Below, piece by piece: positions 46,730 through 59,884 of a stretch of 64,000 bases of DNA. Position numbers and translations under genes: made by a program. Under the pieces are notes generated by a model. That model saw only the letters and a program-made list of their open reading frames with translations, was not told the origin of the DNA and did not search any database. The stretch's first letter is position 1, and each line of letters begins with the position of its first letter. The stretch lies in the IMG/VR virus record IMGVR_UViG_3300032931_001151, positions 62,001 to 126,000 of that record. One strand, written 5' to 3'.

Positions 46730-46894
46730 ATGAGAAAAGAACATCAAATCCATATCCGAGTTAATGATGAGGAAAAACAAAAAATGATTTTAAAGTCAAC
46801 TAAGCTTGGATTTAAACAATTAAGCGAATATCTACGATTTATTGGATTAAATTCTGAAACTAAAGTGGAAATTGACATAAAGGAAAAAAATTAA
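46730..46894 (+). CDS. MobC-like ribbon-helix-helix protein (54 aa, not in ORF track)
   Basis: AGGAG RBS; MRKEHQIHIRVNDEEKQKMILKSTKLGFKQLSEYLRFIGL; TAATG overlap with next gene. Confidence 0.8.
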   Translation: MRKEHQIHIRVNDEEKQKMILKSTKLGFKQLSEYLRFIGLNSETKVEIDIKEKN

Positions 46895-48054
46895 TGATTG
46901 CTAAACTAACCCAAGAAGAATTTGTATATAAAGCAAATAAAATACATAATAACAAATATACATATGATAAAACTGAATATGTTAATGCTAAATCAAAAAT
47001 AACAATAACGTGTCCCGTTCATGGAAATTTTACCCAACTTGCTAATAATCACATTAATGGTTATGGATGTAAGAAGTGCGCTAAAGAAGAACTATACTCT
47101 AATAATACTATGACAATTGACGAATTTCTATCCAAGTCAAACAAAATACATAATAATTTTTATATATACACTAAAACTAAATATATAAAAAGTTATAAAA
47201 AAATTATTATAACTTGCCCAAAACACGGAGATTTTGAACAATTACCCTACGTTCACATAAGGGGATTTGGTTGTATAAAATGTAGCAATGAAAAGAAATC
47301 TCTTCAATATACACATTCAAACGACGACTTCATAAAAAAAGCAAATGTGATACACAATAAGCTCTACGACTATTCAAAATGCATCTATAAAGGAACTCGT
47401 GCAAAGATATGCATTATTTGCCCAATACATGGGGAATTTCACCAAATAGCACATAACCATTTAAATGGGATGGGGTGTAAAAAATGTGCTATGATATCTC
47501 AAAAGAGTATTATTACAAAATCTAACAAAGAATTTATTGATAGATGTAGAAATGTTCACGGAAATTTATATAATTATGATAAAACCAACTATAAAGGTAG
47601 TAAATATAAAGTTTGTATTACCTGTAATAGCCATGGACCGTTCTATCAATCCGCAGGAGGACACCTAAAAGGACAAGGATGTCCAAAATGCAACAACTCT
47701 AAAGGTGAAAACATAATAAATAATTTCTTAATTCGCAATAATATAGAATTTATACCAGAAAAAACATTCCAAGGCTGTAAATTTAAAAAATTGTTACCAT
47801 TTGATTTCTACATTCCATCTCATAACTTATGTATTGAATTTGATGGAAAGCAACATTTTGAATCTGTTGACTATTTTGGAGGGGAGAAGCATCTTAAATA
47901 TATTAAAAACAACGATTTAATTAAAACCAATTATTGTATTAGTAATGGAATAAAGTTGCTTCGTATAAAATATACGGATTTTGATAATATTGAGTTTATT
48001 TTAAATACTCAATTGAATATCACTACCGCAACACCCGAAACTATTTTCAAGTAA
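46894..48054 (+). CDS. putative homing endonuclease: four DUF723-like zinc repeats + Vsr/PD-(D/E)XK-like domain
   Basis: Four C..HG.F.Q....H..G.GC.KC repeats; SKGE, PFDFY, IEFDGKQH, D..K..YC, LLRIKY. Confidence 0.88.
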   Translation: MIAKLTQEEFVYKANKIHNNKYTYDKTEYVNAKSKITITCPVHGNFTQLANNHINGYGCKKCAKEELYSNNTMTIDEFLSKSNKIHNNFYIYTKTKYIKSYKKIIITCPKHGDFEQLPYVHIRGFGCIKCSNEKKSLQYTHSNDDFIKKANVIHNKLYDYSKCIYKGTRAKICIICPIHGEFHQIAHNHLNGMGCKKCAMISQKSIITKSNKEFIDRCRNVHGNLYNYDKTNYKGSKYKVCITCNSHGPFYQSAGGHLKGQGCPKCNNSKGENIINNFLIRNNIEFIPEKTFQGCKFKKLLPFDFYIPSHNLCIEFDGKQHFESVDYFGGEKHLKYIKNNDLIKTNYCISNGIKLLRIKYTDFDNIEFILNTQLNITTATPETIFK

Positions 48055-48786: not shown

Positions 48787-49557
48787 TCAATAATTACAAA
48801 GTTCATCATATTTTCTTGACATTATATCGAGCCTATTCTTAAATCCCGCATAATGTCTTAAAATATTTGTACCTTTTTTATCATAACGAAAGGAGACAAA
48901 TGAATCGTCTCCTTTTGTTGATTTGATTAGACCGCTTCGTATTATATAATTCAGTGAGGGTTGATCATACCACCATTTATAAATTTTATCATTATGATTA
49001 AAAATGGTAGATCTCCATATATCGTAAGTGCCGGTATATATAGAGTCTCTACTAATTATGTATTGTCCGGAGTTTATACCTCTAAAATCTTTTAATAAAA
49101 ATAAATCTCGATGATTAAAATATCTTGAGAAAAATGGTTTGTTGATATTCATTGTGCTCTCATAATACACGAAATCATTTGTTGGCTCGTTGAAATAATT
49201 AGTTATTTTGTTTTCACATATTATGTCGTCGTCAAGAACCATTATTTTTGAATATTTCCCAACGTCTATGTGTTCATCAATATACATTTTTAAGAACGCT
49301 GGATGAAAAACATGTTTAGGTTCTATGGTTGAAACATCATATTTGGAGAATTCTCTATGGTTATCGGTTATTACGAGAATTTCATCTTTATACTCTCCAA
49401 ATTTACGAAGACTCTTAATAAGTATTTTCGCCATATCGTAATGTTCGCAGTGTGAAGTTGATATGATACAAATTAAATTCTTCTCATTTCCGCCCAACTT
49501 TTCTAACTTATTTTTGATTATTTCTGGGTGTATCTGTGTATCTCTAATTATTCTCAT
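48787..49557 (-). CDS. GT-A glycosyltransferase (GT8-like)
   Basis: LIKSLR, VLDDDII (DxD), INSG, DQPSLN, RHYAG. Confidence 0.8.
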   Translation of the reverse strand: MRIIRDTQIHPEIIKNKLEKLGGNEKNLICIISTSHCEHYDMAKILIKSLRKFGEYKDEILVITDNHREFSKYDVSTIEPKHVFHPAFLKMYIDEHIDVGKYSKIMVLDDDIICENKITNYFNEPTNDFVYYESTMNINKPFFSRYFNHRDLFLLKDFRGINSGQYIISRDSIYTGTYDIWRSTIFNHNDKIYKWWYDQPSLNYIIRSGLIKSTKGDDSFVSFRYDKKGTNILRHYAGFKNRLDIMSRKYDELCNY

Positions 49558-49560
49558 TTA

Positions 49561-50283
49561 TTATTCTCCCGTTAGCAAATCTTTATAATCATCCTTATGT
49601 TTAAATCTTTTCATCACTTTACCTTCTATGTCTGAATAGTCATCAAGTTGTAGAGCATATTCTTTTCCTGTACAATATGTTATTAGTCCACTATTAACTA
49701 AAGTATAATCTAACCCGTTCTTATCCGTTTCTTTCTTCTTCATATGACTGTATATCTTCTCCAAATTATTTAAATATAAACATTGTGTACACCATGGCTT
49801 ACGGCTCATTCTTACTACAATCTCTTTCATTTGTTCGTTAGTTAATTTGTGTATTTGTGGATTATGGAAACAAAGTATCTCACAATCAGTCTCCCTAACT
49901 GCCTCCATTATGCTTCCAATATCATCTAAAATACATTTCCTGAATAGAACATCATCTTCTAAAAACAATATACGCTTCTCACCTCTACTCATAGCCAATT
50001 CAAGGATTTTGATGAACGATAGTTTATTCCCAACCGACCCATCTTTGTGCCTTATGGCATTGAATAATGTATAAGTAGAATTTAGTTGCTTGAATTGCCT
50101 ATTGAGGATTTCAAGCCTATCAGTCCGTTCTTCAAGATGATTGACATAAATGTTGTCAAAATATGCATTTAGGGAGTTGCTTGAAATATTAACGATACTA
50201 TCTCTCTTATCTCTCAACTCCTTTAAAATGCATTCTAAAGTTCCTCTATGAGTATGTAGATTTGAATCTCGAATCACCTTCAT
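49561..50283 (-). CDS. GT25-like glycosyltransferase
   Basis: IYVNHLEERTDR, FNAI, GNKLSF, ILFLEDD. Confidence 0.82.
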   Translation of the reverse strand: MKVIRDSNLHTHRGTLECILKELRDKRDSIVNISSNSLNAYFDNIYVNHLEERTDRLEILNRQFKQLNSTYTLFNAIRHKDGSVGNKLSFIKILELAMSRGEKRILFLEDDVLFRKCILDDIGSIMEAVRETDCEILCFHNPQIHKLTNEQMKEIVVRMSRKPWCTQCLYLNNLEKIYSHMKKKETDKNGLDYTLVNSGLITYCTGKEYALQLDDYSDIEGKVMKRFKHKDDYKDLLTGE

Positions 50284-50893
50284 AACAAATCCTCATAAAT
50301 CCGCCTATGGTCAAATCGTCTCATAATCCTATTTTTAATATTTGAATAGTCGTCCAATTGTATGGCATATTCTTTACCCGTACAATATGATATTAGTCTA
50401 CTATAAACTAAAGTGTAATCTAAACCATTCGTATTGGATTCTCTTTCCTTCACATGCTCATAAATCTTCCCTAAATTACTCAAATATAAACACTGATTAC
50501 ACCAAATCTTATGCTTTCGTCTCACGATAAGCATTTTCTTTTCGTCTTCCGTTAGTTTAACTATTTGAGGATTATGGAAACAAAGTATCTCACAATCAGT
50601 CTCTCTAACTGCCTTCATTATGCTTCCGATATCATCTAAGATGCACTTCCGAAATAGTACATCATCTTCTAAAAACAATATACGCTTCTCACCTCTACTC
50701 ATAGCCAACTCAATAATTTTGATGAAAGATAGTTTATTCCCTACCGATCCATCTTTATGTCTTATGGCATTGAATAATGTATAAGTAGAATTAAGTTGCT
50801 TGAATTGCCTATTGAGGATTTCAAGCCTATCAGTCCGTTCTTCAAGATGATTGACATAGATGTTGTCAAAATATGCATTTAGGGAGTTGCTTG
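49853..50893. repeat. direct repeat pair, 49853-50183 vs 50563-50893 (offset 710)
   Basis: 20 mismatches in about 331 nt by hand alignment. Confidence 0.9.
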
Positions 50894-50957
50894 GAGTAGC
50901 CTTCATCTCCTTTGTAGTCGGTATGATCAATTTAGGAGTTTCGTGGAGTATTTTCAT
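50280..50957 (-). CDS. GT25-like glycosyltransferase, tandem duplicate
   Basis: Same motifs; start MKILHET at 50957 overlaps upstream stop (ATGA). Confidence 0.82.
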   Translation of the reverse strand: MKILHETPKLIIPTTKEMKATPSNSLNAYFDNIYVNHLEERTDRLEILNRQFKQLNSTYTLFNAIRHKDGSVGNKLSFIKIIELAMSRGEKRILFLEDDVLFRKCILDDIGSIMKAVRETDCEILCFHNPQIVKLTEDEKKMLIVRRKHKIWCNQCLYLSNLGKIYEHVKERESNTNGLDYTLVYSRLISYCTGKEYAIQLDDYSNIKNRIMRRFDHRRIYEDLL

Positions 50958-51328
50958 TCTTTCCGTTCCCACCATTTTTCAACTTTGTATTCATCGTAAT
51001 TCAATACACAATCCCAATATTCTTCTTTACTTCTATAAACCCACATAGGAATTCTAAATCCGGCGGCAATAAAACATGGACCGGATTGGGGTGTAATAAG
51101 TAAATCTAGGCTTCGTATCATTTCTACTATCCATTTAATATCACCTTTAGTTGGCCTCCAATCTTCGACCCCTTTAGGGATATATGTATTATCTTTATTT
51201 CCTATGGCAATTATAGTATGATCTGGATATTGCTCATGGGCTTGGGCGACCATTTCATCTACTATATGATTTGGAATATCCCCTTGAGTATTTGAGTGAG
51301 TTATTAAGCCAATTAGTTTGAGTCTCAT
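50954..51328 (-). CDS. C-terminal Rossmann half of a GT9-like (GT-B) glycosyltransferase
   Basis: EMIRSLDLLITPQSGPCFIAAGFRIP resembles GT9 D..I..DSGP.H.AAA...P; start MRLKLIG at 51328. Confidence 0.75.
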   Translation of the reverse strand: MRLKLIGLITHSNTQGDIPNHIVDEMVAQAHEQYPDHTIIAIGNKDNTYIPKGVEDWRPTKGDIKWIVEMIRSLDLLITPQSGPCFIAAGFRIPMWVYRSKEEYWDCVLNYDEYKVEKWWERKE

Positions 51329-51330
51329 AA

Positions 51331-52065
51331 TTATTCCATATCCCAATATTTCTTGACCAAAATAGTATACTCTTCATTTAATTCTTTATCTAATTCTTTA
51401 TTGTATTTCTTTTTTAGTTCATAATATAATTGCGAAATTCTTTTAAACCATTTCCATTTATATTTTGCATCATTTATTAATTCCCGCACCATTTCGACGT
51501 TGCTATCATATAATTTAAATAAAATAATTTTTATTAGATCTTGGGCATTCGTACCACATACTTCTTCAAATACTTTTCCGGATTTTAACTCTTTCTCTAT
51601 TGAATTTGCCACCTCTTGATAATATGCATTAAACTCTCTATCATTGTTATACTCAGAAGATGTAACCGAACGTGGATGATAATTATCTTTCCATCCCATA
51701 TAGTTTAGAAAATGCACCACTTCATGGAATAGATCGTCTTTCATTTTCTCTACGATTTTATAGTATTCTTTATTTTCAAATTCAGCACCTAGTCCTCTTG
51801 ATATAGCATTTAAATTTATCATTGGATATTTATTACGATCTAATACCGTGAAATATCCCGGAACATTAATTCTATTTTTATTATTAGTTATGCCGACCAA
51901 AAGCGAATATTTAACTAAATATACATCTTTCTTTCCACTATTCTTGAATTCTTTTAATATATCATCAACAATATCATTTACTTGATTTCTAAAATTTTCA
52001 TCATCTATTCTTTCCACTAAAAAATGCCCATTTATATAATTCTCATAAAATTCACTAAATTTCAT
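51331..52065 (-). CDS. putative zinc metallopeptidase-like protein (HExxH), possible internal head protein
   Basis: LFHEVVH...REFNAY; start MKFSEFYE at 52065 after GAGG. Confidence 0.65.
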   Translation of the reverse strand: MKFSEFYENYINGHFLVERIDDENFRNQVNDIVDDILKEFKNSGKKDVYLVKYSLLVGITNNKNRINVPGYFTVLDRNKYPMINLNAISRGLGAEFENKEYYKIVEKMKDDLFHEVVHFLNYMGWKDNYHPRSVTSSEYNNDREFNAYYQEVANSIEKELKSGKVFEEVCGTNAQDLIKIILFKLYDSNVEMVRELINDAKYKWKWFKRISQLYYELKKKYNKELDKELNEEYTILVKKYWDME

Positions 52066-52066
52066 T

Positions 52067-53227
52067 TTATTTCCTCTCACAATTAAAATGTATATCAAAC
52101 GATTTAGGATTTGTCATGGTTGGATCCATAAATCTATAAAATCTCTTCACTCCATTCATTGTAGGCCATTCTTCTAATTTTGGATTACAACCACAATCAA
52201 TAGCATACGGTATATTTTCTCTTGGAACCCACTCAACCCCGTCAAAATACTCTAAAATACCCTTGCGAGACTCTTGGAACCACACTTTAACTGGCTTACC
52301 CGTCTTTATATAATACAAATGAGCCGCAGCAACAAACCCTATAACATCTCCAAGTAACGAGTGACCACACCAAAATCCTCTATTATTAGGTGATATATAT
52401 TTTTTATCATATTCGGCTATTAATGCATCTTTGGATCTCATACAATGAACTATTGATGGCTTTACAATCCTCTTATCGCCATTCATATAATCTTCAAATA
52501 CCCACGGTTGATACGAGGGTAGTCCACCTTTCCAATAATTAGTCCAATCGGAACACCAAAGATGTTTAGTTTTATCTAAGGTTCTTTCATATGGATCTTG
52601 CATAATATGACCAACATAAGCTAATGCGGGTTCTTCCGTGAAGTTTTTGTATCCTTTATTGTGAGCATCTTCAAAAAACTTCGTAGTTCTTTGATAGAAC
52701 TCATCAATAGCATCTTTAGAAATACCCCAAAATCCCGCATTAGTATTCCAATATTTATTTGTTGTAACCCCGTGTTCTTTCAATAGATTACAATAATCTT
52801 CTAATTTACACCCCCACCAATTGTCTCTATGTTTTGAGTTTATTGGGTTAACTTCATTCTCCATTTGTACGAAAACTTTACTATTTCCAATTTCTTTAGT
52901 CAAATCTCCGGGATTAGCAACGAAGTAACAGTCCGCATCGAGAAACACATAATAATCATAATTAAGTTTACTTACTTCATTTTTGAGGAAATGGAACTTA
53001 AACATATATAGCTTTTTATCAAATTTACCACAAGGATGCACTATAGCACCTTCAATTGAAGGTAAGTCCGTAAAAATGTGGAAGTCTTGAGTTACCCCTA
53101 CTCGTCTTGCCGATTCAACCATAGTAGAAGCCATTTTCCCATGATTCTCGGAGGCAACGGTCCAATAGCAGAATGTTTTTTTATTACTTCTTGTTATTAT
53201 TTTACCAATTGATTCTGGAAGATTCAT
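52067..53227 (-). CDS. GT-A glycosyltransferase fused to the N-terminal half of a GT9-like domain
   Basis: VFLDADC, NAGFW, EEPALA, IVH; then GHSLLGDVI...KVWF..ILEYF. Confidence 0.78.
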   Translation of the reverse strand: MNLPESIGKIITRSNKKTFCYWTVASENHGKMASTMVESARRVGVTQDFHIFTDLPSIEGAIVHPCGKFDKKLYMFKFHFLKNEVSKLNYDYYVFLDADCYFVANPGDLTKEIGNSKVFVQMENEVNPINSKHRDNWWGCKLEDYCNLLKEHGVTTNKYWNTNAGFWGISKDAIDEFYQRTTKFFEDAHNKGYKNFTEEPALAYVGHIMQDPYERTLDKTKHLWCSDWTNYWKGGLPSYQPWVFEDYMNGDKRIVKPSIVHCMRSKDALIAEYDKKYISPNNRGFWCGHSLLGDVIGFVAAAHLYYIKTGKPVKVWFQESRKGILEYFDGVEWVPRENIPYAIDCGCNPKLEEWPTMNGVKRFYRFMDPTMTNPKSFDIHFNCERK

Positions 53228-54012
53228 TTAATTCTCTTGCCTTTCCCATTGCCTTTGCACACTTGAGGTTCACAATTCTGGTATTCACACCAACTACATA
53301 GAACTGATGGGCATGGCTTCCATTTTGACACATCATCAACGTCAAGGGCTAATATGGTGTTTATACCATTCCCTATTCTATTTTCAGCATCTTCAATGGA
53401 ATCAGCTTCTAAAATTTCTTCTTTTACAAAATCGTCTATCTCAAATCCCGAACCAGCACATAGATATACTCCTTGAAATTTAAGTTTTTTAGGAGTCTTA
53501 CCTGTTACTTTAGATATAAGATAATAATAGAAAGCAAATTGTGCCGTATGATCTCCCGTTTTTTTAGAAGTTTTATAATCTACCACACACCAATTCTCTT
53601 CTTCATCTCTATATAAAACGTCTATTTTTCCGGTTACATCTATATAAGGACTTAAAGCAATTCTAAATTCCTTTTCATGATAAACTTTTGAACTATTTGC
53701 CAATTTAGCATTATAAAACGCTTCAATTCTCTTAAAGGCTAATGGGAGTTTAGCCGCATATTCTTGAGTTAATATATATTTTTGATTATATAAATTAAAT
53801 AATCTTTTAATTTCATCTTGACCACCACCAAAGTAATTTTCCGCAATTTCATGGCATAAATTGCCGAAATCTGTAACATCATTATCTTTCTCTACTCGCT
53901 TCTTTTCTACATATTTTAAATACCAAGAATACCGACACTTTTCTATAGCACCCAAACTAGAGTGAGATAATGTAAATACTGTAGTATCGTGAGTGGTCTT
54001 AGTTTTTTGCAT
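53224..54012 (-). CDS. RecB/Cas4-like PD-(D/E)XK exonuclease
   Basis: LSHSS....CRY, G..CHE, GKID, VDYKT, QFAFY, C.WC...C; start MQKT at 54012 after AGGA. Confidence 0.88.
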   Translation of the reverse strand: MQKTKTTHDTTVFTLSHSSLGAIEKCRYSWYLKYVEKKRVEKDNDVTDFGNLCHEIAENYFGGGQDEIKRLFNLYNQKYILTQEYAAKLPLAFKRIEAFYNAKLANSSKVYHEKEFRIALSPYIDVTGKIDVLYRDEEENWCVVDYKTSKKTGDHTAQFAFYYYLISKVTGKTPKKLKFQGVYLCAGSGFEIDDFVKEEILEADSIEDAENRIGNGINTILALDVDDVSKWKPCPSVLCSWCEYQNCEPQVCKGNGKGKRIK

Positions 54013-54038
54013 AATATTTCCTATTATGCTATTATACC

Positions 54039-54278
54039 TCAAATTATATGGATTTCAACACCCATTTCAGTTAATTCAAGAATATCTTCGGTAAAGTATT
54101 TCGACTCTATTACTAATGTATCGGTTTCAAATATATAATCATCAAGATCATCACCCGATACTTCTTCAAAATCTTTCCCATATACATCCGACATAAACAA
54201 TAATATCTTTTTTGTTTTAGATTCATTTTCTTCAAATATAGCAAATGAAGTTTCTTCTAAATCGGAAAAGTAAAGCAT
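54039..54278 (-). CDS. acidic hypothetical protein
   Basis: AGGAG RBS. Confidence 0.7.
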   Translation of the reverse strand: MLYFSDLEETSFAIFEENESKTKKILLFMSDVYGKDFEEVSGDDLDDYIFETDTLVIESKYFTEDILELTEMGVEIHII

Positions 54279-55238: not shown

Positions 55239-56579
55239 TTATTTCACGGGGAGCGGTGGAACCGCATTATCTAATCCTTCTTCCTCTGGAGTTGCTTCTG
55301 GAGTTTCTGGTGTTGCTTCAGGAGTTGCTTCGGTAGGAGTTTCCGATGTTGCTTCGGGTGTTGCTTCAGGTGACTCCCCTTTAGTCGGCGTCGTTTCGGC
55401 GGCAACTTCCTCTGGCTTGGACTCTTCTTGATCTTTTATATCACCTTCGCCTAAGTTCTGAGAATTAAATATAACATATACTTGACCCATAGAACCCGAT
55501 TCTTGATTATATACACTCGTTAACGTTCTAAAAATATTACTTCTAACGAATATAGGATCTTCTTTATTTGATTTTATAAACTCGTGTACTAATGACGGAA
55601 CCATTACGTTAACTTTATCGAGTGGAATCTTATAGTTCTCACCTTCTTCAGTAACCATTGCCCCTATATCAATCAAATTTGCTCTAATAGCTGGAGCATT
55701 TGAGAAGTTTATTTTGATAGTTCTCAAAAAGTTTATAGCCTTTGATTTATCTTGCCAATTCTTTCCGAAATTCGTTTCAAGGTATGCATTTATTTTATCA
55801 TATGCTTGGCGTTTCATATCGGTTGAAAGTTCATTGTTAGCATTATATATTGGAACATTGGAATTATGAATTATTATGTTCTTCTCTCTCTTATCCATTA
55901 AAGGGTATGTTTTTCTTAATTCTCTATTTTTATCTCTTAACATATCTCTTTGAGAAGGAGTAAGTAAATTCATAACATCTTTAGAAGAGATTCCAGATTT
56001 TAAATCGTCTTCTGGTATAAGTTTCTTCAAATCAAGTCCGACATTGACATATTTAAATTTTTCTAATCTAATATTGTTTTCATTGGTTAAGCTATAATCA
56101 ACATCTACGTCTCCACTATCAGCGAACATCTTTGTTACTTTTTGCTCAGGGGTTTCTTGCGGTTCAACTGGAGATTCGGGGGTAATTTCAGGCTCTACTG
56201 GAGCATCTTCCGTTGGTAGTTCTTTCGTATCATCTTTAGTTTCTTTAGGTGGTGGAGTTTCATCTTTACTTATCTCAGCGTCTATCATATCATCTAAAGA
56301 TTCTTCCCCTTCTGCCTCAATTATTCCAAATTGAGTTTCGCCTGGCTCTTTGGCTACACATATTGGACCCGCATAACCACCGCCTCCACCTTCCGATTGA
56401 CTTAATGACGATTGACCGGTTCCATATAATTTTGGACCAGCGCCGAATAATACACCCTCGGCAATTATGGCCTTCACTTTATTTCTAACTGGTGGTTCTA
56501 TCACGACTTGAGTCTTAACCGGCTCCAATTTGATAGGTTTAGGTGACTCATAAAATAATGATTTAATTTTGTTCGACAT
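55239..56579 (-). CDS. acidic Pro/Glu/Thr-rich late protein (prohead core/internal-protein candidate)
   Basis: Late-promoter motif upstream; PEAT repeats at about 55283-55372. Confidence 0.65.
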   Translation of the reverse strand: MSNKIKSLFYESPKPIKLEPVKTQVVIEPPVRNKVKAIIAEGVLFGAGPKLYGTGQSSLSQSEGGGGGYAGPICVAKEPGETQFGIIEAEGEESLDDMIDAEISKDETPPPKETKDDTKELPTEDAPVEPEITPESPVEPQETPEQKVTKMFADSGDVDVDYSLTNENNIRLEKFKYVNVGLDLKKLIPEDDLKSGISSKDVMNLLTPSQRDMLRDKNRELRKTYPLMDKREKNIIIHNSNVPIYNANNELSTDMKRQAYDKINAYLETNFGKNWQDKSKAINFLRTIKINFSNAPAIRANLIDIGAMVTEEGENYKIPLDKVNVMVPSLVHEFIKSNKEDPIFVRSNIFRTLTSVYNQESGSMGQVYVIFNSQNLGEGDIKDQEESKPEEVAAETTPTKGESPEATPEATSETPTEATPEATPETPEATPEEEGLDNAVPPLPVK

Positions 56580-57194: not shown

Positions 57195-58109
57195 ATGATA
57201 AAGGCAAAATTCTATCTAATAAATCTTGAAAAAGATACCGCTAAATTAGAGTGGTGTAAAAAAGTAATTGGCGATAGATTTGAATTTGAAGTATTTAAGG
57301 CTATTGAAGTGGGAGAAAAAGAAGATATAAAAAACTTTAAAACTAAGGGAGAATATGGGTGCTTCCAAAGTCATATGAAAGTAATGGAAAAGTGTCTAAA
57401 AGAAAAAGATAGTTATGATTTATTTTTCATCATGGAAGATGATATATTATTTGTAGAGAATTTTGATAAGTATTTCAACGATGTTGTGGATAAACTTGTT
57501 AAAACCGACTACGATGTATGTTTGTTTTATGATTGGTCTAAAACCGACGATTTAACAGAAGATATAATTTCACTTAAAAAAACCGATTCGTTATATTTAC
57601 ATTTTTATGCTATACATCCTAATAAAATAGGAAAAATGCTTTGGTATGGTAATACATATTGGTGCCCATTAGATTATATTATAAAGCATGAAAGTAGTCA
57701 AGGAAATATAAACGCAATAACAACATCTAAAATTCTTGTTAAACAAAATAGATTTTTTGATTCTGCATTAACTGGATATGGATTTAGAGGAGAGCTAAAC
57801 GGCGTTCTTGATTGTGTATATCCGTATGATGACATGTATTCTAAAGAATGTGAATTAATTGGAAAATGGAAACTTTACAAGACTAATTTTAGAGATATAT
57901 TAGAATTTTTTATTGACGGATCCGTTACTTGCGAACAATCAAAACTTACGGGTGGGAGATGGAGAATGATACACAACGAGGTAATAATAACATTTTTACA
58001 ACCCGAAGTATTTGAAATAATCTATTTAAAAAATAATAAAGTATATAGTAAAATGCCGGGAGAAAGTTGGGATACTATGAAAACTTTTATTATAAAAGAG
58101 GGAAAATGA
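57195..58109 (+). CDS. GT25-like glycosyltransferase + C-terminal beta domain
   Basis: YLINLEKD, FKAI, GCFQSH, IMEDD, HFYAI; LIGKW...GGRWR. Confidence 0.85.
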   Translation: MIKAKFYLINLEKDTAKLEWCKKVIGDRFEFEVFKAIEVGEKEDIKNFKTKGEYGCFQSHMKVMEKCLKEKDSYDLFFIMEDDILFVENFDKYFNDVVDKLVKTDYDVCLFYDWSKTDDLTEDIISLKKTDSLYLHFYAIHPNKIGKMLWYGNTYWCPLDYIIKHESSQGNINAITTSKILVKQNRFFDSALTGYGFRGELNGVLDCVYPYDDMYSKECELIGKWKLYKTNFRDILEFFIDGSVTCEQSKLTGGRWRMIHNEVIITFLQPEVFEIIYLKNNKVYSKMPGESWDTMKTFIIKEGK

Positions 58110-59884
58110 GAATTAAATTCTATCTAATAAATCTTGAAAAAGATATATCTAAACTTAATTGGTGCAAAAAAATAATAGGAAATATGTTTGAATTTGAAGT
58201 ATTTAAAGCAATTGTACCCAAAAGTAGAGGAGAATTCCCATCCATAGGGATTCGTGGTTGTTTTGAGAGCCATTTAGCATTATATAAAGAAATTGATAAA
58301 ATTAAAAATGATATAGATGTTGCTATTATAATGGAAGACGATATATGTTTTTCTAGTGAATTTGAATTAAATTTTAAATCTCTAGTTGATCGATTGCTAT
58401 ATAAAGAATATGACATATGTCATTTTTATGATGTACACCAAAAAGATATTGACTGGCCTATTACATTTAGAGAAAGTAATACCCACAATACTCATTTTTA
58501 TGCCATAAACCCAAAAAGTGCTCTAAAAATATTCAATAAAATAAAAGATTATGACGTTGATATTGATCATGTGTTGCATACTAAAAGTAAATTAAAAGAA
58601 ATAAATACACTGTCAACAACTAAAACCATAGTTAAACAGAATAGATATTTTATGTCTAGTGTTACTGCCCAAGGTTTTAGAACCGATATACAATATAGTT
58701 ATGATTTTATATATCCATATGATGATCTTTTCAAAGATGAATGTCCTTTAATTGGAAAATGGCATTTCTCAAAAATAAATTATAAAGAAGAATGGATTTT
58801 TAATGAAAACGGATCTATAATTTGTAAAAATACAGGTGGAAGATGGAGAATAATTAACGGAGTTCTTTCAATTACATTTGATGACCCAAGATATTGGGAA
58901 ACGTTTCCAATTAAAGATGGAAAATCATATACAGCAATGAAAGGATCTAGTTGGGATAATAGAGACATCTATTTAATTAAAGACTCTTCTACGTACAAAG
59001 AAAGTGGAGTAAAATTCTTTTTAATAAATCTTGAAAAAGATAAAGAAAAATTAAAATGGTGTAAAAAAATAATAGGAGATAGATTTGAATATGAAGTATT
59101 TAATGGGATTGTGCCGGAGGACAAAGGTGAATTCCCAACTATAGGAATGAGAGGATGTCACGAAAGTCATACTAAAATATGGGAAATGGCAAAAAATATG
59201 ACAGATTGTAGTTTAGTCATAATAATGGAAGATGATATAGTGCTATCCAATAGTTTTGATTCTAAATTTAAAATGGCTTTGGCGGCAATGAAGCAACAAG
59301 ATTTTGAAATAGGGCTATTTTACGATTGCTTCCGTGAAGAATTTACGGAAGAAAATATATTCTTAGTTGAAAGTTCTTCGTATAATTTACATTTTTATGC
59401 AATTAAACCTCACACCGTAGAAAAATGCCTAGATTTAGTAAAAGGGTCTTGTTGCGATATAGATCACACTTTACATATGGGTTCTATAGATAAAAAAATA
59501 AGAATGGTATCAACTTCACGAAATCTTGTTGCTCAAAATAGATATTTTGATTCTAATGTAACAAAAACGGGATATAGAGAGGAAAATAGAAGCTTTCCTT
59601 TTATATACCCATATGATGACATATATTCAAAAAAATGCCCATTAATAGGAAAATGGTATTTTAGAAAAATTAATTTTAGAGATACGTTTGAATTTAAAGA
59701 GAATGGGACCGTAAAATGTATGGCACCCGGAGGAAGATGGAGAAAAGTTGGAAATGAAATCGTTATAACTTTTGAAAATAGTCAATGGAAAGAATACATA
59801 TATTTGCTAGAAGGAAATACTTACACCGTAATGCAAGGGGTAAGTTGGGATAAAAACAATATTATTGTAACTAAATTAAATTAG
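58106..59884 (+). CDS. tandem double GT25-like glycosyltransferase
   Basis: Two full copies of the same unit; start MRIKFY at 58106 (ATGA overlap, GAGGG RBS). Confidence 0.85.
   Translation: MRIKFYLINLEKDISKLNWCKKIIGNMFEFEVFKAIVPKSRGEFPSIGIRGCFESHLALYKEIDKIKNDIDVAIIMEDDICFSSEFELNFKSLVDRLLYKEYDICHFYDVHQKDIDWPITFRESNTHNTHFYAINPKSALKIFNKIKDYDVDIDHVLHTKSKLKEINTLSTTKTIVKQNRYFMSSVTAQGFRTDIQYSYDFIYPYDDLFKDECPLIGKWHFSKINYKEEWIFNENGSIICKNTGGRWRIINGVLSITFDDPRYWETFPIKDGKSYTAMKGSSWDNRDIYLIKDSSTYKESGVKFFLINLEKDKEKLKWCKKIIGDRFEYEVFNGIVPEDKGEFPTIGMRGCHESHTKIWEMAKNMTDCSLVIIMEDDIVLSNSFDSKFKMALAAMKQQDFEIGLFYDCFREEFTEENIFLVESSSYNLHFYAIKPHTVEKCLDLVKGSCCDIDHTLHMGSIDKKIRMVSTSRNLVAQNRYFDSNVTKTGYREENRSFPFIYPYDDIYSKKCPLIGKWYFRKINFRDTFEFKENGTVKCMAPGGRWRKVGNEIVITFENSQWKEYIYLLEGNTYTVMQGVSWDKNNIIVTKLN

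What the first reader, a model, noticed from the sequence alone, without database searches (positions are those of the whole stretch)
50954..53227. GT-B glycosyltransferase split at its interdomain linker by an inserted HExxH gene
Seen: the 386-aa ORF ends with a GT9-like N-domain (LLGDVI...FDIHFNCERK*) and the ORF at 51328 supplies the C-domain (MRLKLIGLITHS...SGPCFIAA). Both are in the same reading frame. Removing exactly 750 nt between GAG microhomologies (plus-strand CTC at 52074-52076 and 51324-51326) restores ...HFNCERLKLIGLITHS.... The junctions also share TAATT(G/A)TGAGA (52075-52085 and 51323-51333), though joining at that 11-mer would be out of frame. The insert encodes only a 244-aa HEVVH protein, with no nuclease or transposase. 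Inference: either a tolerated insertion giving a two-chain GT-B, as in Alg13/Alg14, or an excisable, spliced or bypassed element.
Basis: partly seen in the sequence, partly recalled or inferred. Interest (0 to 1): 0.72.

Follow-up and report, generated by a model that had tools for sequence, protein, structure and literature searches.

The report
Phage glycosyltransferase split by inserted gene
In a roughly 214-kb tailed phage, a glycosyltransferase gene that is one piece in every other known relative is cut in two at the hinge between its two lobes by an inserted zinc-protease-like gene, and the two pieces probably reassemble as a two-chain enzyme.

Summary
All three ORFs lie on the minus strand. 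ORF A (53227..52067, 386 aa) is a GT-A-like domain plus the N-lobe of a compact domain of about 225 aa, called X here. ORF C (51328..50954, 124 aa) is the C-lobe of X. ORF B (52065..51331, 244 aa, HEVVH) sits between them.

More than 30 protein clusters and 13 of 13 DNA loci elsewhere carry X in one piece. The break falls in the variable 8-14-residue linker, and no conserved residue is lost.

A model of an intact homologue matches GT9 heptosyltransferases across both lobes (VIA Z 12.6 to WaaF; Foldseek E 2e-6 to TibC). No Pfam GT9 match exists.

The two halves are predicted to bind: ipSAE 0.89, best control 0.00. In calibration, 58 of 80 solved complexes and 2 of 110 mismatched pairs reached the mark.

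ORF B belongs to a small phage family of gluzincin-like proteins. It has no detectable nuclease, is multi-copy in a related 332-kb phage, and stands free everywhere else.

Nothing supports an intron, intein, bypass or excision. The junction repeats are at chance level.

Best reading: a genes-in-pieces case whose insert is not a homing endonuclease. This is a new variant of a known kind, of moderate interest.

The parts
52388..53227 (-). ORF A, residues 1 to about 280: GT-A-like (nucleotide-diphospho-sugar transferase-like) domain with a DAD motif in ...YVFLDADCYF...
   Evidence: About 60 homologue clusters of roughly 260 aa cover only this part; one is named nucleotide-diphospho-sugar transferase by its source. 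Atlas feature neighbours are phage GT8, Nucleotid_trans and GT6 clusters at 0.95-0.96. There is no Pfam hit and the fold was not modelled here.
52067..52387 (-). ORF A, residues 281-386 plus the stop: N-lobe of the GT9-like domain X. It carries the invariant LGD motif (D294) and ends at ...FDIHFNCERK, then TAA.
   Evidence: Matches residues 4-105 of standalone X (P0072) at 71% identity. Alignments A1 and A4. Model of an intact homologue matches GT9 structures.
51331..52065 (-). ORF B, 244 aa: the inserted gene, a gluzincin-like protein. HEVVH lies at 51726..51712. Family-invariant residues are D22, H114, E115, H118, E144, K208 and R209.
   Evidence: phmmer gave 31 hits at about 27-39% identity (best ten 33-37%), most of them 205-267 aa. 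Alignment A3. Model pLDDT 88. Only weak zincin-type fold neighbours. No Pfam, PHROG or NCBIfam match. GC is 26.8%, second lowest of 46 ORFs in the window.
50954..51328 (-). ORF C, 124 aa: C-lobe of domain X, with LIGLITHSNTQGDI and the TPQSGPCFIAAG motif.
   Evidence: Matches residues 115-233 of P0072 at 61% identity. Alignments A1 and A5. Predicted to bind the N-lobe.
52063..52085 (-). Upstream junction: the last codons of A (TGT GAG AGG AAA TAA), one spacer base, then the ATG of B. GAGAGGA within A's last codons lies 7 nt upstream of B's ATG, where a Shine-Dalgarno site would sit. The first copy of the 11-mer is here.
   Evidence: Read directly from the sequence. Repeat statistics.
51323..51340 (-). 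Downstream junction: stop TAA of B, two spacer bases, then the ATG of C, with a weak GGA 6 nt upstream. The second copy of the 11-mer is here.
   Evidence: Read directly from the sequence. Repeat statistics.
48787..50975 (-). Downstream genes of the same tightly packed minus-strand block: two GT25-like paralogues (50975..50280 and 50283..49561) and a GT8-like gene (49557..48787).
   Evidence: Pfam Glyco_transf_25 at E 1.3e-6 and 4.4e-7; Glyco_transf_8 at E 3.5e-5, 23.9 bits, just under its 24.3-bit cut-off. Gene overlaps or spacers are 22, 4 and 3 nt.
53224..54042 (-). Upstream gene of the block: a PD-(D/E)XK exonuclease-like protein whose stop overlaps the start of A by 4 nt.
   Evidence: Pfam PDDEXK_1 at E 4e-23; phrog_69 exonuclease.

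Best explanation
An ancestral single gene encoded a two-domain glycosyltransferase: a GT-A-like domain followed by a compact GT9-like GT-B domain, X. An insertion of about 740 nt cut it in the flexible linker between the two Rossmann lobes of X. The insert consists of essentially one gene, ORF B.

ORF B encodes a 244-aa HExxH...E (gluzincin-like) protein. Its family is part of the gene pool of this phage's relatives and is multi-copy in one of them.

The insertion left a stop codon for the upstream piece and a start codon for the downstream piece. A, B and C lie 1 and 2 nt apart inside a terminator-free, same-strand block of glycosyltransferase genes. They are probably co-transcribed and translationally coupled.

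The 386-aa chain carries the GT-A domain plus the N-lobe with the invariant LGD aspartate. That aspartate lines up with the proposed catalytic base D13 of heptosyltransferase I. The 124-aa chain carries the C-lobe, which is the nucleotide-sugar-binding lobe in GT9 enzymes. The two chains then reassemble non-covalently into a two-chain GT-B. The insert is not removed at the DNA, RNA or translation level.

What is shown: the split, its uniqueness, its position in the linker, the intactness of both halves, and the GT9-like fold of intact homologues.
What is predicted: binding of the halves.
What is inferred: co-expression, enzymatic activity, and the way the insert arrived, most likely illegitimate or nuclease-provoked recombination in a plastic region.
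For: Uninterrupted homologues:
- GT-A+X proteins of 486-577 aa cover 92-96% of A and continue into the C-lobe.
- Standalone X proteins have 218-237 aa, and methyltransferase+X fusions also exist.
- 7 of 7 viral and 6 of 6 metagenome DNA loci carry X in one piece.
- The only other short C-lobe hits are fragments. One of them spans the linker intact.

Position of the break:
- It falls in a variable spacer of 8-14 residues. The window's two ends add up to 9 residues.
- The closest viral comparator reads ...HMNCKKNKKSEKLIGL... where the window reads ...HFNCERK / MRLKLIGL....

Intactness of the halves:
- Both keep every invariant column of the half-domain alignments: 25 in the N-lobe and 24 in the C-lobe.
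- They are 56-72% and 47-70% identical to intact homologues, the same range as intact homologues show to one another.

Fold of X: VIA Z 12.6, 11.9, 10.9 and 10.9 to WaaF, WaaC, a Veillonella GT9 and TibC, over about 205 of 228 residues. Foldseek E 2e-6.

Predicted binding of the halves: ipSAE 0.89, best of 3 controls 0.00. The mark was reached by 58 of 80 solved complexes and 2 of 110 mismatched pairs.

Other support:
- The same arrangement occurs in two samples.
- The region has no minus-strand terminator-like site, and promoter-like sites are at shuffle level.
- B is low in GC. It is a variable accessory gene with 6, 1 and 0 copies in other phage records.
- Two phage records related by baseplate protein carry B-family genes but no X or GT-A domain.
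- Precedent: phage genes split by free-standing inserted genes still give working enzymes. Examples are Aeh1 nrdA/mobE and T4 topoisomerase genes 39/60 with mobA (PMC2988022).
Against: - There is no direct evidence that any of the three proteins is made or that the split enzyme is active.
- No sequencing run could be listed, so transcripts and rare deleted forms were not examined.
- The two contigs carrying the split are identical. They give no measure of selection since the insertion, and a recent insertion would also leave both halves looking intact.
- No close relative with an empty site exists in the databases; the best N-lobe match is about 72% identical. The exact insertion boundaries and its age are therefore unknown.
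- The complex prediction used my own alignments. Two halves of one domain are expected to score well whether or not the separate chains fold in vivo.
- X is not a sequence-level GT9 member, so its chemistry is uncertain.
Confidence: 0.7

Rival explanations
1. The insertion killed domain X. The N-lobe tail of A and ORF C are recent relics that have not yet decayed, and only the GT-A domain of A (and B) still works.
For: The split is unique to this lineage. The two carrier contigs are identical, so there is no signal of purifying selection after the event. Many relatives carry the GT-A domain alone as a protein of about 260 aa, so it can work without X.
Against: Both halves keep all family-invariant residues and show no excess divergence. 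C has its own ATG 2 nt after B's stop and a full-length open frame. The cut lies exactly in the one place where a GT-B tolerates separation. The halves are predicted to bind.
Confidence: 0.13
2. The insert is removed to regenerate one chain. The route could be DNA excision between short repeats, RNA splicing (an intron carrying an ORF), protein splicing, or ribosomal bypass from the AAA before the stop to a downstream AAA.
For: A and C share a frame. A 750-nt deletion restores a plausible linker, and a 10/11 repeat lies at both junctions. An AAA codon precedes A's stop, and an AAA is codon 4 of C.
Against: - No Rfam family matches, including group I and II introns, at E up to 1. The ORF fills 735 of roughly 740 nt, leaving no room for a ribozyme core.
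- The shared frame has 41 stops across the insert, and the halves end at the linker with no extra intein-like sequence. This excludes an intein or split intein.
- No recombinase was found in or beside the insert.
- The repeat register of 752 nt is out of frame, and such repeats are common here.
- From my own knowledge, not checked in a paper here: known bypass gaps are about 50 nt, whereas this gap is 750 nt and holds a conserved, SD-preceded gene.
- Both independent assemblies contain the insert.
Confidence: 0.03
3. ORF B is itself a selfish mobile gene, either an unrecognised nuclease or a passenger of one. It targets or repeatedly invades phage genes, and the split is a homing-type event rather than a random insertion. 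This concerns the origin of the insert and is compatible with a two-chain enzyme.
For: - Copy number varies from 0 to 6 among phage records, with tandem copies and a decayed copy.
- In the related 332-kb phage, one copy lies beside an HNH_2 gene and an IS607-like TnpB plus serine recombinase pair. Another lies beside a relic of the DUF723/DUF559-like repeat protein.
- A full copy of that protein lies 3 kb from the split gene in the window.
- The insert has low GC.
Against: - No nuclease fold or motif was found in B. Its conserved core is HExxH...E on a zincin-like topology.
- Every other family member examined stands free or is fused, and none sits inside another gene.
- B is single-copy in this genome.
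- No conserved cassette ends were found.
Confidence: 0.1
4. B was retained inside the gene because it works with the glycosyltransferase, for example as a third subunit, or a processing or regulatory protease of the same pathway. Its position would enforce co-expression.
For: The three ORFs are tightly coupled. A contig fragment of another phage carries an intact X and a B-family gene 9 kb apart.
Against: Related phages carry B-family genes without any X or GT-A domain. Most phages with X examined here lack a nearby B. The one fusion partner found for the B domain is a different protein, the 446-aa family.
Confidence: 0.04

Closest known systems
Genes-in-pieces of T4-like phages: Aeh1 nrdA split by mobE, T4 topoisomerase genes 39/60 with mobA, phage 25 gene 43 with a seg gene (PMC2988022)
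   Same: A phage gene that is contiguous in relatives is cut into two cistrons by a free-standing inserted ORF. The pieces are expressed from one operon with overlapping or near-abutting stops and starts. In those known cases the pieces reassemble into an active enzyme.
   Different: The inserted gene here is not an HNH or GIY-YIG endonuclease and has no detectable nuclease. The reviewed cuts of nrdA and the topoisomerase gene lie in functionally critical regions, whereas this cut is in a variable interdomain linker. The host gene is an accessory glycosyltransferase, not a replication or nucleotide-metabolism gene.
Alg13/Alg14 heterodimeric UDP-GlcNAc transferase (PMC9527342)
   Same: From my own knowledge (one search shows only that ALG13/ALG14 form a heterodimeric transferase): a GT-B enzyme whose N-terminal and C-terminal Rossmann lobes are separate polypeptides that associate to form the active site at the lobe interface.
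   Different: Different GT family: the fold matches here are GT9. In Alg13/14 the split is ancient and conserved, the genes are unlinked, and there is no insert. Here the split is unique to one phage lineage and is occupied by a foreign gene.
GT9 heptosyltransferases WaaC/WaaF and the autotransporter heptosyltransferase TibC (PMC5713226, PMC4358343)
   Same: Best structural matches over both lobes. An N-terminal G-D motif lies at the position of the proposed catalytic base D13. A C-lobe motif, TPQSGPCFIAAG, resembles VDTGLSHLTAA.
   Different: - X has about 225 aa against 320-390.
- There is no significant Pfam or profile match.
- The position of D261 appears to be Gln, and no counterpart of K192 is evident.
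- X occurs fused to GT-A or methyltransferase domains.
Fractured genes with split inteins and a free-standing endonuclease gene between them (PMC2677866)
   Same: Two halves of one gene flank an inserted free-standing ORF.
   Different: No intein sequence is attached to either half, because both end within the native linker. No endonuclease is present, so trans-splicing cannot be invoked.
Minimal gluzincin, SprT-like and ImmA/IrrE-type zincin metallopeptidases of phages
   Same: HExxH on a long helix after a small beta-sheet, with an invariant Glu on the next helix (EFNAY) 26 residues after the second His. The weak structural neighbours are selecase, jannalysin, Spartan, M48 and IrrE/SprT-like proteins.
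   Different: No match reaches significance, and no Pfam, PHROG or NCBIfam family applies. There is an extra C-terminal helical bundle with an invariant KR motif. Activity is unknown.

Membership tests
GT9 glycosyltransferases (Pfam PF01075, heptosyltransferases) | GT-B architecture (two Rossmann-like lobes) closest to solved GT9 enzymes | tested here: met
   The model of the intact homologue P0088 has pLDDT 75.6. The top eight VIA matches are all GT9 (Z 12.6-10.7, about 186-207 residues aligned). Foldseek E is 2e-6 to TibC.
GT9 glycosyltransferases (Pfam PF01075, heptosyltransferases) | Significant match to the family's sequence model | tested here: not met
   ORFs A and C and seven intact homologues have no Pfam hit to PF01075 or any GT-B family. 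PF01075 finds nothing in the phage genome at E up to 10. hhalign of the X profile against WaaC plus WaaF gives E 0.41.
GT9 glycosyltransferases (Pfam PF01075, heptosyltransferases) | Catalytic residues of heptosyltransferase I: D13, K192 and D261 (PMC5713226) | tested here: inconclusive
   The invariant LGD Asp (D294 of ORF A) sits where D13 does by motif and by the register of the structural alignment. The only profile alignment, which is not significant, puts Gln at D261. No Lys equivalent to K192 is evident.
GT9 glycosyltransferases (Pfam PF01075, heptosyltransferases) | Transfer of heptose from ADP-heptose | not testable with these tools
   This needs an enzyme assay.
Phage genes-in-pieces (gene split by a free-standing inserted gene) | The gene is contiguous in relatives but here forms two cistrons flanking an inserted ORF | tested here: met
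Phage genes-in-pieces (gene split by a free-standing inserted gene) | The inserted ORF is a homing endonuclease (HNH, GIY-YIG, LAGLIDADG and the like) | tested here: not met
   No nuclease family was found in Pfam, PHROGs or NCBIfam. Fold searches give only weak zincin or helical matches.
Phage genes-in-pieces (gene split by a free-standing inserted gene) | The split polypeptides reassemble into an active enzyme | tested here: inconclusive
   Binding is predicted: ipSAE 0.89, best control 0.00. In calibration, 58 of 80 solved complexes and 2 of 110 mismatched pairs reached the mark. Activity cannot be tested here.
Alg13/Alg14-type two-chain GT-B | N-lobe and C-lobe on separate polypeptides | tested here: met
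Alg13/Alg14-type two-chain GT-B | Homology to the Alg13/Alg14/MurG (GT28/GT1) lineage | tested here: not met
   None of these appears among the listed fold matches, which are led by GT9.
Intein or split intein | In-frame insertion, or intein halves attached to the two exteins | tested here: not met
   B is in another frame. The shared frame has 41 stops across the insert. Both halves end inside the native linker with no extra residues.
Group I or group II intron carrying an ORF | Ribozyme core flanking or enclosing the ORF | tested here: not met
   No Rfam match at E up to 1 in 50500..53600. The ORF fills all but about 5 nt of the insert.
Programmed translational bypass (T4 gene 60 type) | A short non-coding gap (about 50 nt) between matched take-off and landing codons | tested here: not met
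   The gap would be about 750 nt and contains a conserved protein-coding gene preceded by a purine-rich Shine-Dalgarno-like sequence. The size of known bypass gaps is from my own knowledge.
Gluzincin-type zincin metallopeptidase (for ORF B) | HExxH plus a downstream Glu ligand, conserved across the family | tested here: met
   H114, E115, H118 and E144 are invariant in 27 sequences.
Gluzincin-type zincin metallopeptidase (for ORF B) | Significant sequence or fold match to a described peptidase family | tested here: inconclusive
   Pfam has nothing above noise. Foldseek pdb best E is 0.37 (selecase). The best BFVD match, E 1.2e-3, and the best AFDB match, E 0.015, are unnamed; the named ones (SprT, IrrE, M48) start at E about 0.03. 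VIA gives only helical-bundle matches at Z up to 7.2. Atlas structural neighbours have TM up to 0.49.

The most novel reading that the evidence does not exclude
The ORF B family is an unrecognised kind of self-propagating phage gene. It would be a zincin-fold protein that either has cryptic DNA-targeting activity or hitch-hikes on neighbouring endonucleases, and that can land inside coding sequences and survive by splitting proteins at tolerant linkers. Alternatively, B is a built-in regulator whose position inside the gene controls assembly of the two-chain glycosyltransferase.
Probability: 0.1. Interest if true: 0.7.

Novelty: new variant of a known kind. Interest (0 to 1): 0.45.

Why it matters
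This is a clean natural experiment in protein splitting. A GT-B enzyme is cut exactly at its hinge, and many uninterrupted homologues are available for comparison. If the halves reassemble, two things follow:
- The genes-in-pieces phenomenon extends beyond homing-endonuclease inserts and beyond replication and nucleotide-metabolism genes.
- It gives a compact (about 225 aa) GT9-like scaffold that tolerates two-chain expression.

The work also defines two unannotated families. One is a promiscuous mini GT-B domain found fused to GT-A and methyltransferase domains in phages, with one source-named bacterial (Planctomycetales) member. The other is a multi-copy zincin-like family of large phages. 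The finding does not overturn any concept.

Tried and rejected
- Read-level test for a 750-nt-deleted form: two searches for sequencing runs listed none (the first attempt, did not complete).
- blastn of the region against the phage collection: no match.
- Single-sequence scans of viral contigs with A and with B: nothing.
- First alignment scan: failed because the half-rows spoiled conservation. It was repeated with A2.
- The word-indexed protein search with B found only itself. The exhaustive phmmer search was needed.
- Profile searches of X and B against PDB sequences: only noise.
- hhalign of X against WaaC/WaaF: not significant.
- NCBIfam and PHROGs for A, B, C and homologues: nothing.
- VIA wide search with the B model: only generic helical matches.
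- Junction microhomology or 11-mer as a mechanistic clue: rejected as chance level.
- Synteny of B with the 446-aa gene or the PD-(D/E)XK gene in relatives: none found.
Full report
**What is there.** The window is bases 62,001-126,000 of a 214,200-base IMG/VR virus record. It carries baseplate genes: gp6-like and J-like wedge proteins and a VgrG-like OB domain. It is therefore a large tailed phage with a complex baseplate.

On the minus strand, a run of genes from about 54.9 kb to 48.8 kb is packed with overlaps or spacers of 1-22 nt. The run has no terminator-like site on that strand. In order, it contains:
- several small ORFs;
- a PD-(D/E)XK exonuclease-like gene (54042..53224);
- ORF A (53227..52067, 386 aa);
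- ORF B (52065..51331, 244 aa);
- ORF C (51328..50954, 124 aa);
- two GT25-like paralogues and a GT8-like gene.

The junctions read ...TGT GAG AGG AAA TAA A ATG... and ...TAA TT ATG AGA CTC.... A purine-rich GAGAGGA lies 7 nt before B's ATG, and a weak GGA lies 6 nt before C's ATG.

**Checking the observation.** Details are in the observation check.

The decisive point is homology. A search with A found 93 protein clusters. They fall into four groups:
- GT-A-like proteins of about 260 aa that cover only A's first two thirds;
- proteins of 486-577 aa that cover 92-96% of A and run on;
- proteins of 218-237 aa that match only A's last 100 residues;
- methyltransferase fusions that carry the same 100 residues.

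Reading these sequences shows that the 100 residues are the first half of a domain of about 225 aa, called X here. The second half of X is ORF C. The standalone X protein P0072 matches the phage genome in two pieces. Its residues 4-105 lie in A at 71% identity, and its residues 115-233 lie in C at 61% identity.

Motif positions in about 30 clusters show both halves in one chain. The spacer between FDIHFN and IGLITHS is 8-14 residues. The window's two ends (CERK plus MRLKL) add up to 9. The nearest viral comparator reads HMNCKKNKKSEKLIGL where the window reads HFNCERK-stop / MRLKLIGL.

Uninterrupted X was found in 7 of 7 viral-contig loci and 6 of 6 metagenome loci. A search for short proteins like C found only two fragments. 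One of them spans the linker intact. The split is therefore derived and, so far, unique.

It is not an assembly error. Contigs from two JGI samples carry the same three genes and are identical over the shared 3,924 nt.

**What the split domain is.** No Pfam, PHROG or NCBIfam model matches A, C or intact X proteins. PF01075 (Glyco_transf_9) finds nothing in the genome even at E 10.

An AlphaFold2 model of intact P0088 has pLDDT 75.6 and pTM 0.77. It matches GT9 heptosyltransferases first:
- Foldseek gives E 2e-6 to TibC, followed by a Veillonella GT9, WaaF and WaaC.
- The VIA second look gives Z 12.6 (WaaF), 11.9 (WaaC), 10.9 (Veillonella GT9) and 10.9 (TibC).
- These alignments cover model residues 3-223 against chain residues of about 8-300, so both lobes are matched. 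Other GT-B enzymes come below Z 10.

X is a shortened, sequence-divergent relative.

The invariant LGD aspartate (D294 of A) sits at the place of D13. D13 is the proposed catalytic base, conserved in all heptosyltransferases (PMC5713226). A profile-profile comparison with WaaC/WaaF is not significant (E 0.41). Its only aligned stretch pairs LLIAPQTGPCFIAAG with VVSVDTGLSHLTAA, which puts Gln where D261 is. The donor and the chemistry may therefore differ from canonical GT9.

The N-terminal two thirds of A look like a GT-A transferase. The evidence is a DAD motif, a homologue named nucleotide-diphospho-sugar transferase by its source, and Atlas neighbours in GT8, Nucleotid_trans and GT6 clusters at 0.95-0.96. 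This part was not modelled.

**Are the halves still good?** In alignments of each half with 15 intact homologues, the window's sequences keep all 25 (N-lobe) and all 24 (C-lobe) invariant columns. They are 56-72% and 47-70% identical to the others. Intact homologues show the same range of identity to one another.

A complex prediction of the two halves gave ipSAE 0.89 in three concordant runs, against 0.00 for the best of three controls. In calibration, 58 of 80 solved complexes and 2 of 110 mismatched pairs reached the mark. Those counts hold only roughly because my own alignments were used. This supports binding but does not show it. Two halves of one domain are expected to score well.

**What the insert is.** B has no word-level relatives among 5.8 billion clusters. 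An exhaustive phmmer search found 31 proteins, ten of them at E 1e-10 or better. The best ten are 33-37% identical (the whole list runs about 27-39%), and most hits have 205-267 aa.

Twenty-seven of them align with invariant D22, H114-E115-x-x-H118, E144 (in EFNAY) and K208-R209. The model has pLDDT 88.3. It shows a helix, a four-stranded sheet, a long helix carrying HExxH, a second helix carrying the Glu, and then a helical bundle. This is the order of elements in gluzincins.

Fold searches give no significant match:
- Foldseek against pdb has best E 0.37, to the minigluzincin selecase.
- VIA-wide returns only generic helical matches at Z up to 7.2.
- BFVD has best E 1.2e-3, to unnamed phage proteins. 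SprT-like, IrrE and a zinc-binding metallopeptidase follow from E 0.03.
- AFDB clusters start at E 0.015, and the named hits are M48, IrrE/ImmA, MA-clan and SprT-like proteins.
- Atlas structural neighbours are U49, M48, SprT and M78 proteins at TM up to 0.49.

I read B as a divergent zincin-like protein of unknown substrate. No nuclease, recombinase or transposase signature was found.

**Where else the B family lives.** B is single-copy in this genome. Two phage records are related to the window's phage, with baseplate protein 42-48% identical over its full length.
- The 332-kb record has six copies. They include a tandem pair, a pair flanking another gene, and one copy broken by stops.
- The 144-kb record has one copy.
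- Neither record has X or the GT-A domain.

An unrelated, complete 220-kb phage with intact X has no B. An 11.5-kb phage fragment has an intact GT-A+X+methyltransferase gene and a free-standing B relative about 9 kb away. The closest B relative stands free next to AAA_28 and UvdE genes.

Every other copy examined is either a free-standing gene or, in one case, the N-terminal domain of a larger protein. None lies inside another gene.

In the 332-kb phage, one copy sits beside an HNH_2 gene and an IS607-like TnpB plus serine recombinase pair. Another sits beside a relic of a Zn-ribbon repeat protein. A full copy of that protein has DUF723 repeats plus a DUF559-like C-terminus at 19.8 bits, just under the cut-off. 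It lies 3 kb from the split gene in the window.

B also has the second-lowest GC of 46 ORFs in the window, 26.8% against a mean of 32.8% with sd 3.4. Together these points describe an accessory gene that turns over in plastic, nuclease-rich regions. That is a plausible source of an illegitimate insertion, but it is not evidence that B moves by itself.

**Mechanisms that would remove the insert.**
- Rfam finds nothing in 50,500-53,600 at E up to 1. The ORF fills all but about five bases of the insert, so an intron core has no room.
- B is in a different frame from A and C, and the A/C frame has 41 stops across the insert. Both halves end inside the native linker without extra residues. This excludes an intein or split intein of the 'fractured gene' type (PMC2677866).
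- The 10/11 junction repeat is out of frame and is matched or beaten by many chance repeats. No inverted repeats bracket the insert.
- A ribosomal hop from the AAA before A's stop to the AAA at codon 4 of C would have to cross 750 nt that contain a conserved gene preceded by a Shine-Dalgarno-like sequence. From my own knowledge, known hops are about 50 nt.
- Reads could not be examined, because no run was listed.

**Most likely working.** One insertion into the hinge of a GT-A+X gene produced three coupled cistrons. The 386-aa chain carries the GT-A domain plus the N-lobe with the catalytic-base candidate. The 124-aa chain carries the C-lobe, the nucleotide-sugar lobe in GT9. They reassemble into a two-chain GT-B.

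This parallels the phage genes-in-pieces cases in which nrdA, the topoisomerase gene and gene 43 are split by mobE, mobA or seg genes and still yield active enzymes (PMC2988022). In architecture it resembles the Alg13/Alg14 heterodimer (PMC9527342). I put this reading at about 0.7. The main rival is that X is a freshly dead relic, at about 0.13. Removal of the insert is at about 0.03.

What the glycosyltransferase cluster modifies is not determinable here. It could be virion proteins, host envelope or something else.

**Novelty and score.** Gene splitting by inserted free-standing genes is known in phages, and two-chain GT-B enzymes are known. Several things are new:
- the combination of the two;
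- an insert without a recognisable nuclease;
- a cut placed exactly at a GT-B hinge;
- two families without annotation.

This is a new variant of a known kind, with interest 0.45.

Noticed in passing
window 55239-56579 (- strand); L018:3722-5656: Residues 143-436 of the 446-aa acidic, Pro-rich protein encoded 3.2 kb upstream on the same strand are 35% identical (E 1e-48) to the C-terminal part of a 645-aa protein in another phage contig. The N-terminal part of that protein is a B-family zincin domain with HEIIH, EWEAYF and KRIYQLY. This Rosetta-stone link suggests that B-family proteins work with, or on, this protein family. No Pfam or PHROG match for either.
   Followed up: partly
window 49561-50975 (- strand): The two GT25-like genes are tandem paralogues. 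Their central 330 nt or so are about 95% identical, while their ends are far more diverged. This points to a recent partial gene conversion or duplication, and so to active recombination right beside the split gene.
   Followed up: partly
window 46894-48054 (+ strand); L016:4424-4645: A 386-aa protein has four to five repeats of a Zn-ribbon-like unit (KIHNNKYxYD...CPxHGxF...GCxKC; Pfam DUF723) and a C-terminus that just misses the DUF559 (Vsr-like endonuclease) cut-off. A 73-aa relic of the same repeat lies directly beside a B paralogue in the related 332-kb phage. It may be a homing-type nuclease family.
   Followed up: partly
L012, L015, L016, L017 (IMGVR_UViG_3300037851_000141, 332 kb): This related large phage is rich in mobile elements: an IS607-like TnpB plus serine recombinase pair, an HNH_2 gene, and a 990-aa portal-like ORF with what looks by eye like a LAGLIDADG-type intein. 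It also has six B-family copies, one of them decayed.
   Followed up: partly
window 58067-59884 (+ strand): A third GT25-domain protein (605 aa; Glyco_transf_25 at E 2e-20) has a lipocalin-like domain. With the GT8-like, GT25-like and GT-A+X genes, the phage carries at least five glycosyltransferase domains within 11 kb, next to its baseplate genes.
   Followed up: no
window 16773-43046 (- strand): Six consecutive ORFs, four of them very long (3195, 1674, 1911 and 1204 aa). The 1204-aa one has gp6-like and Baseplate_J domains. The others were not examined.
   Followed up: no
P0071-P0092; L008:2-1603: Domain X is promiscuous. It occurs alone, after a GT-A domain, before class I SAM or FkbM methyltransferase domains, and in GT-A+X+methyltransferase proteins. 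One member is named by its source as coming from a Planctomycetales bacterium. It has no Pfam family.
   Followed up: partly
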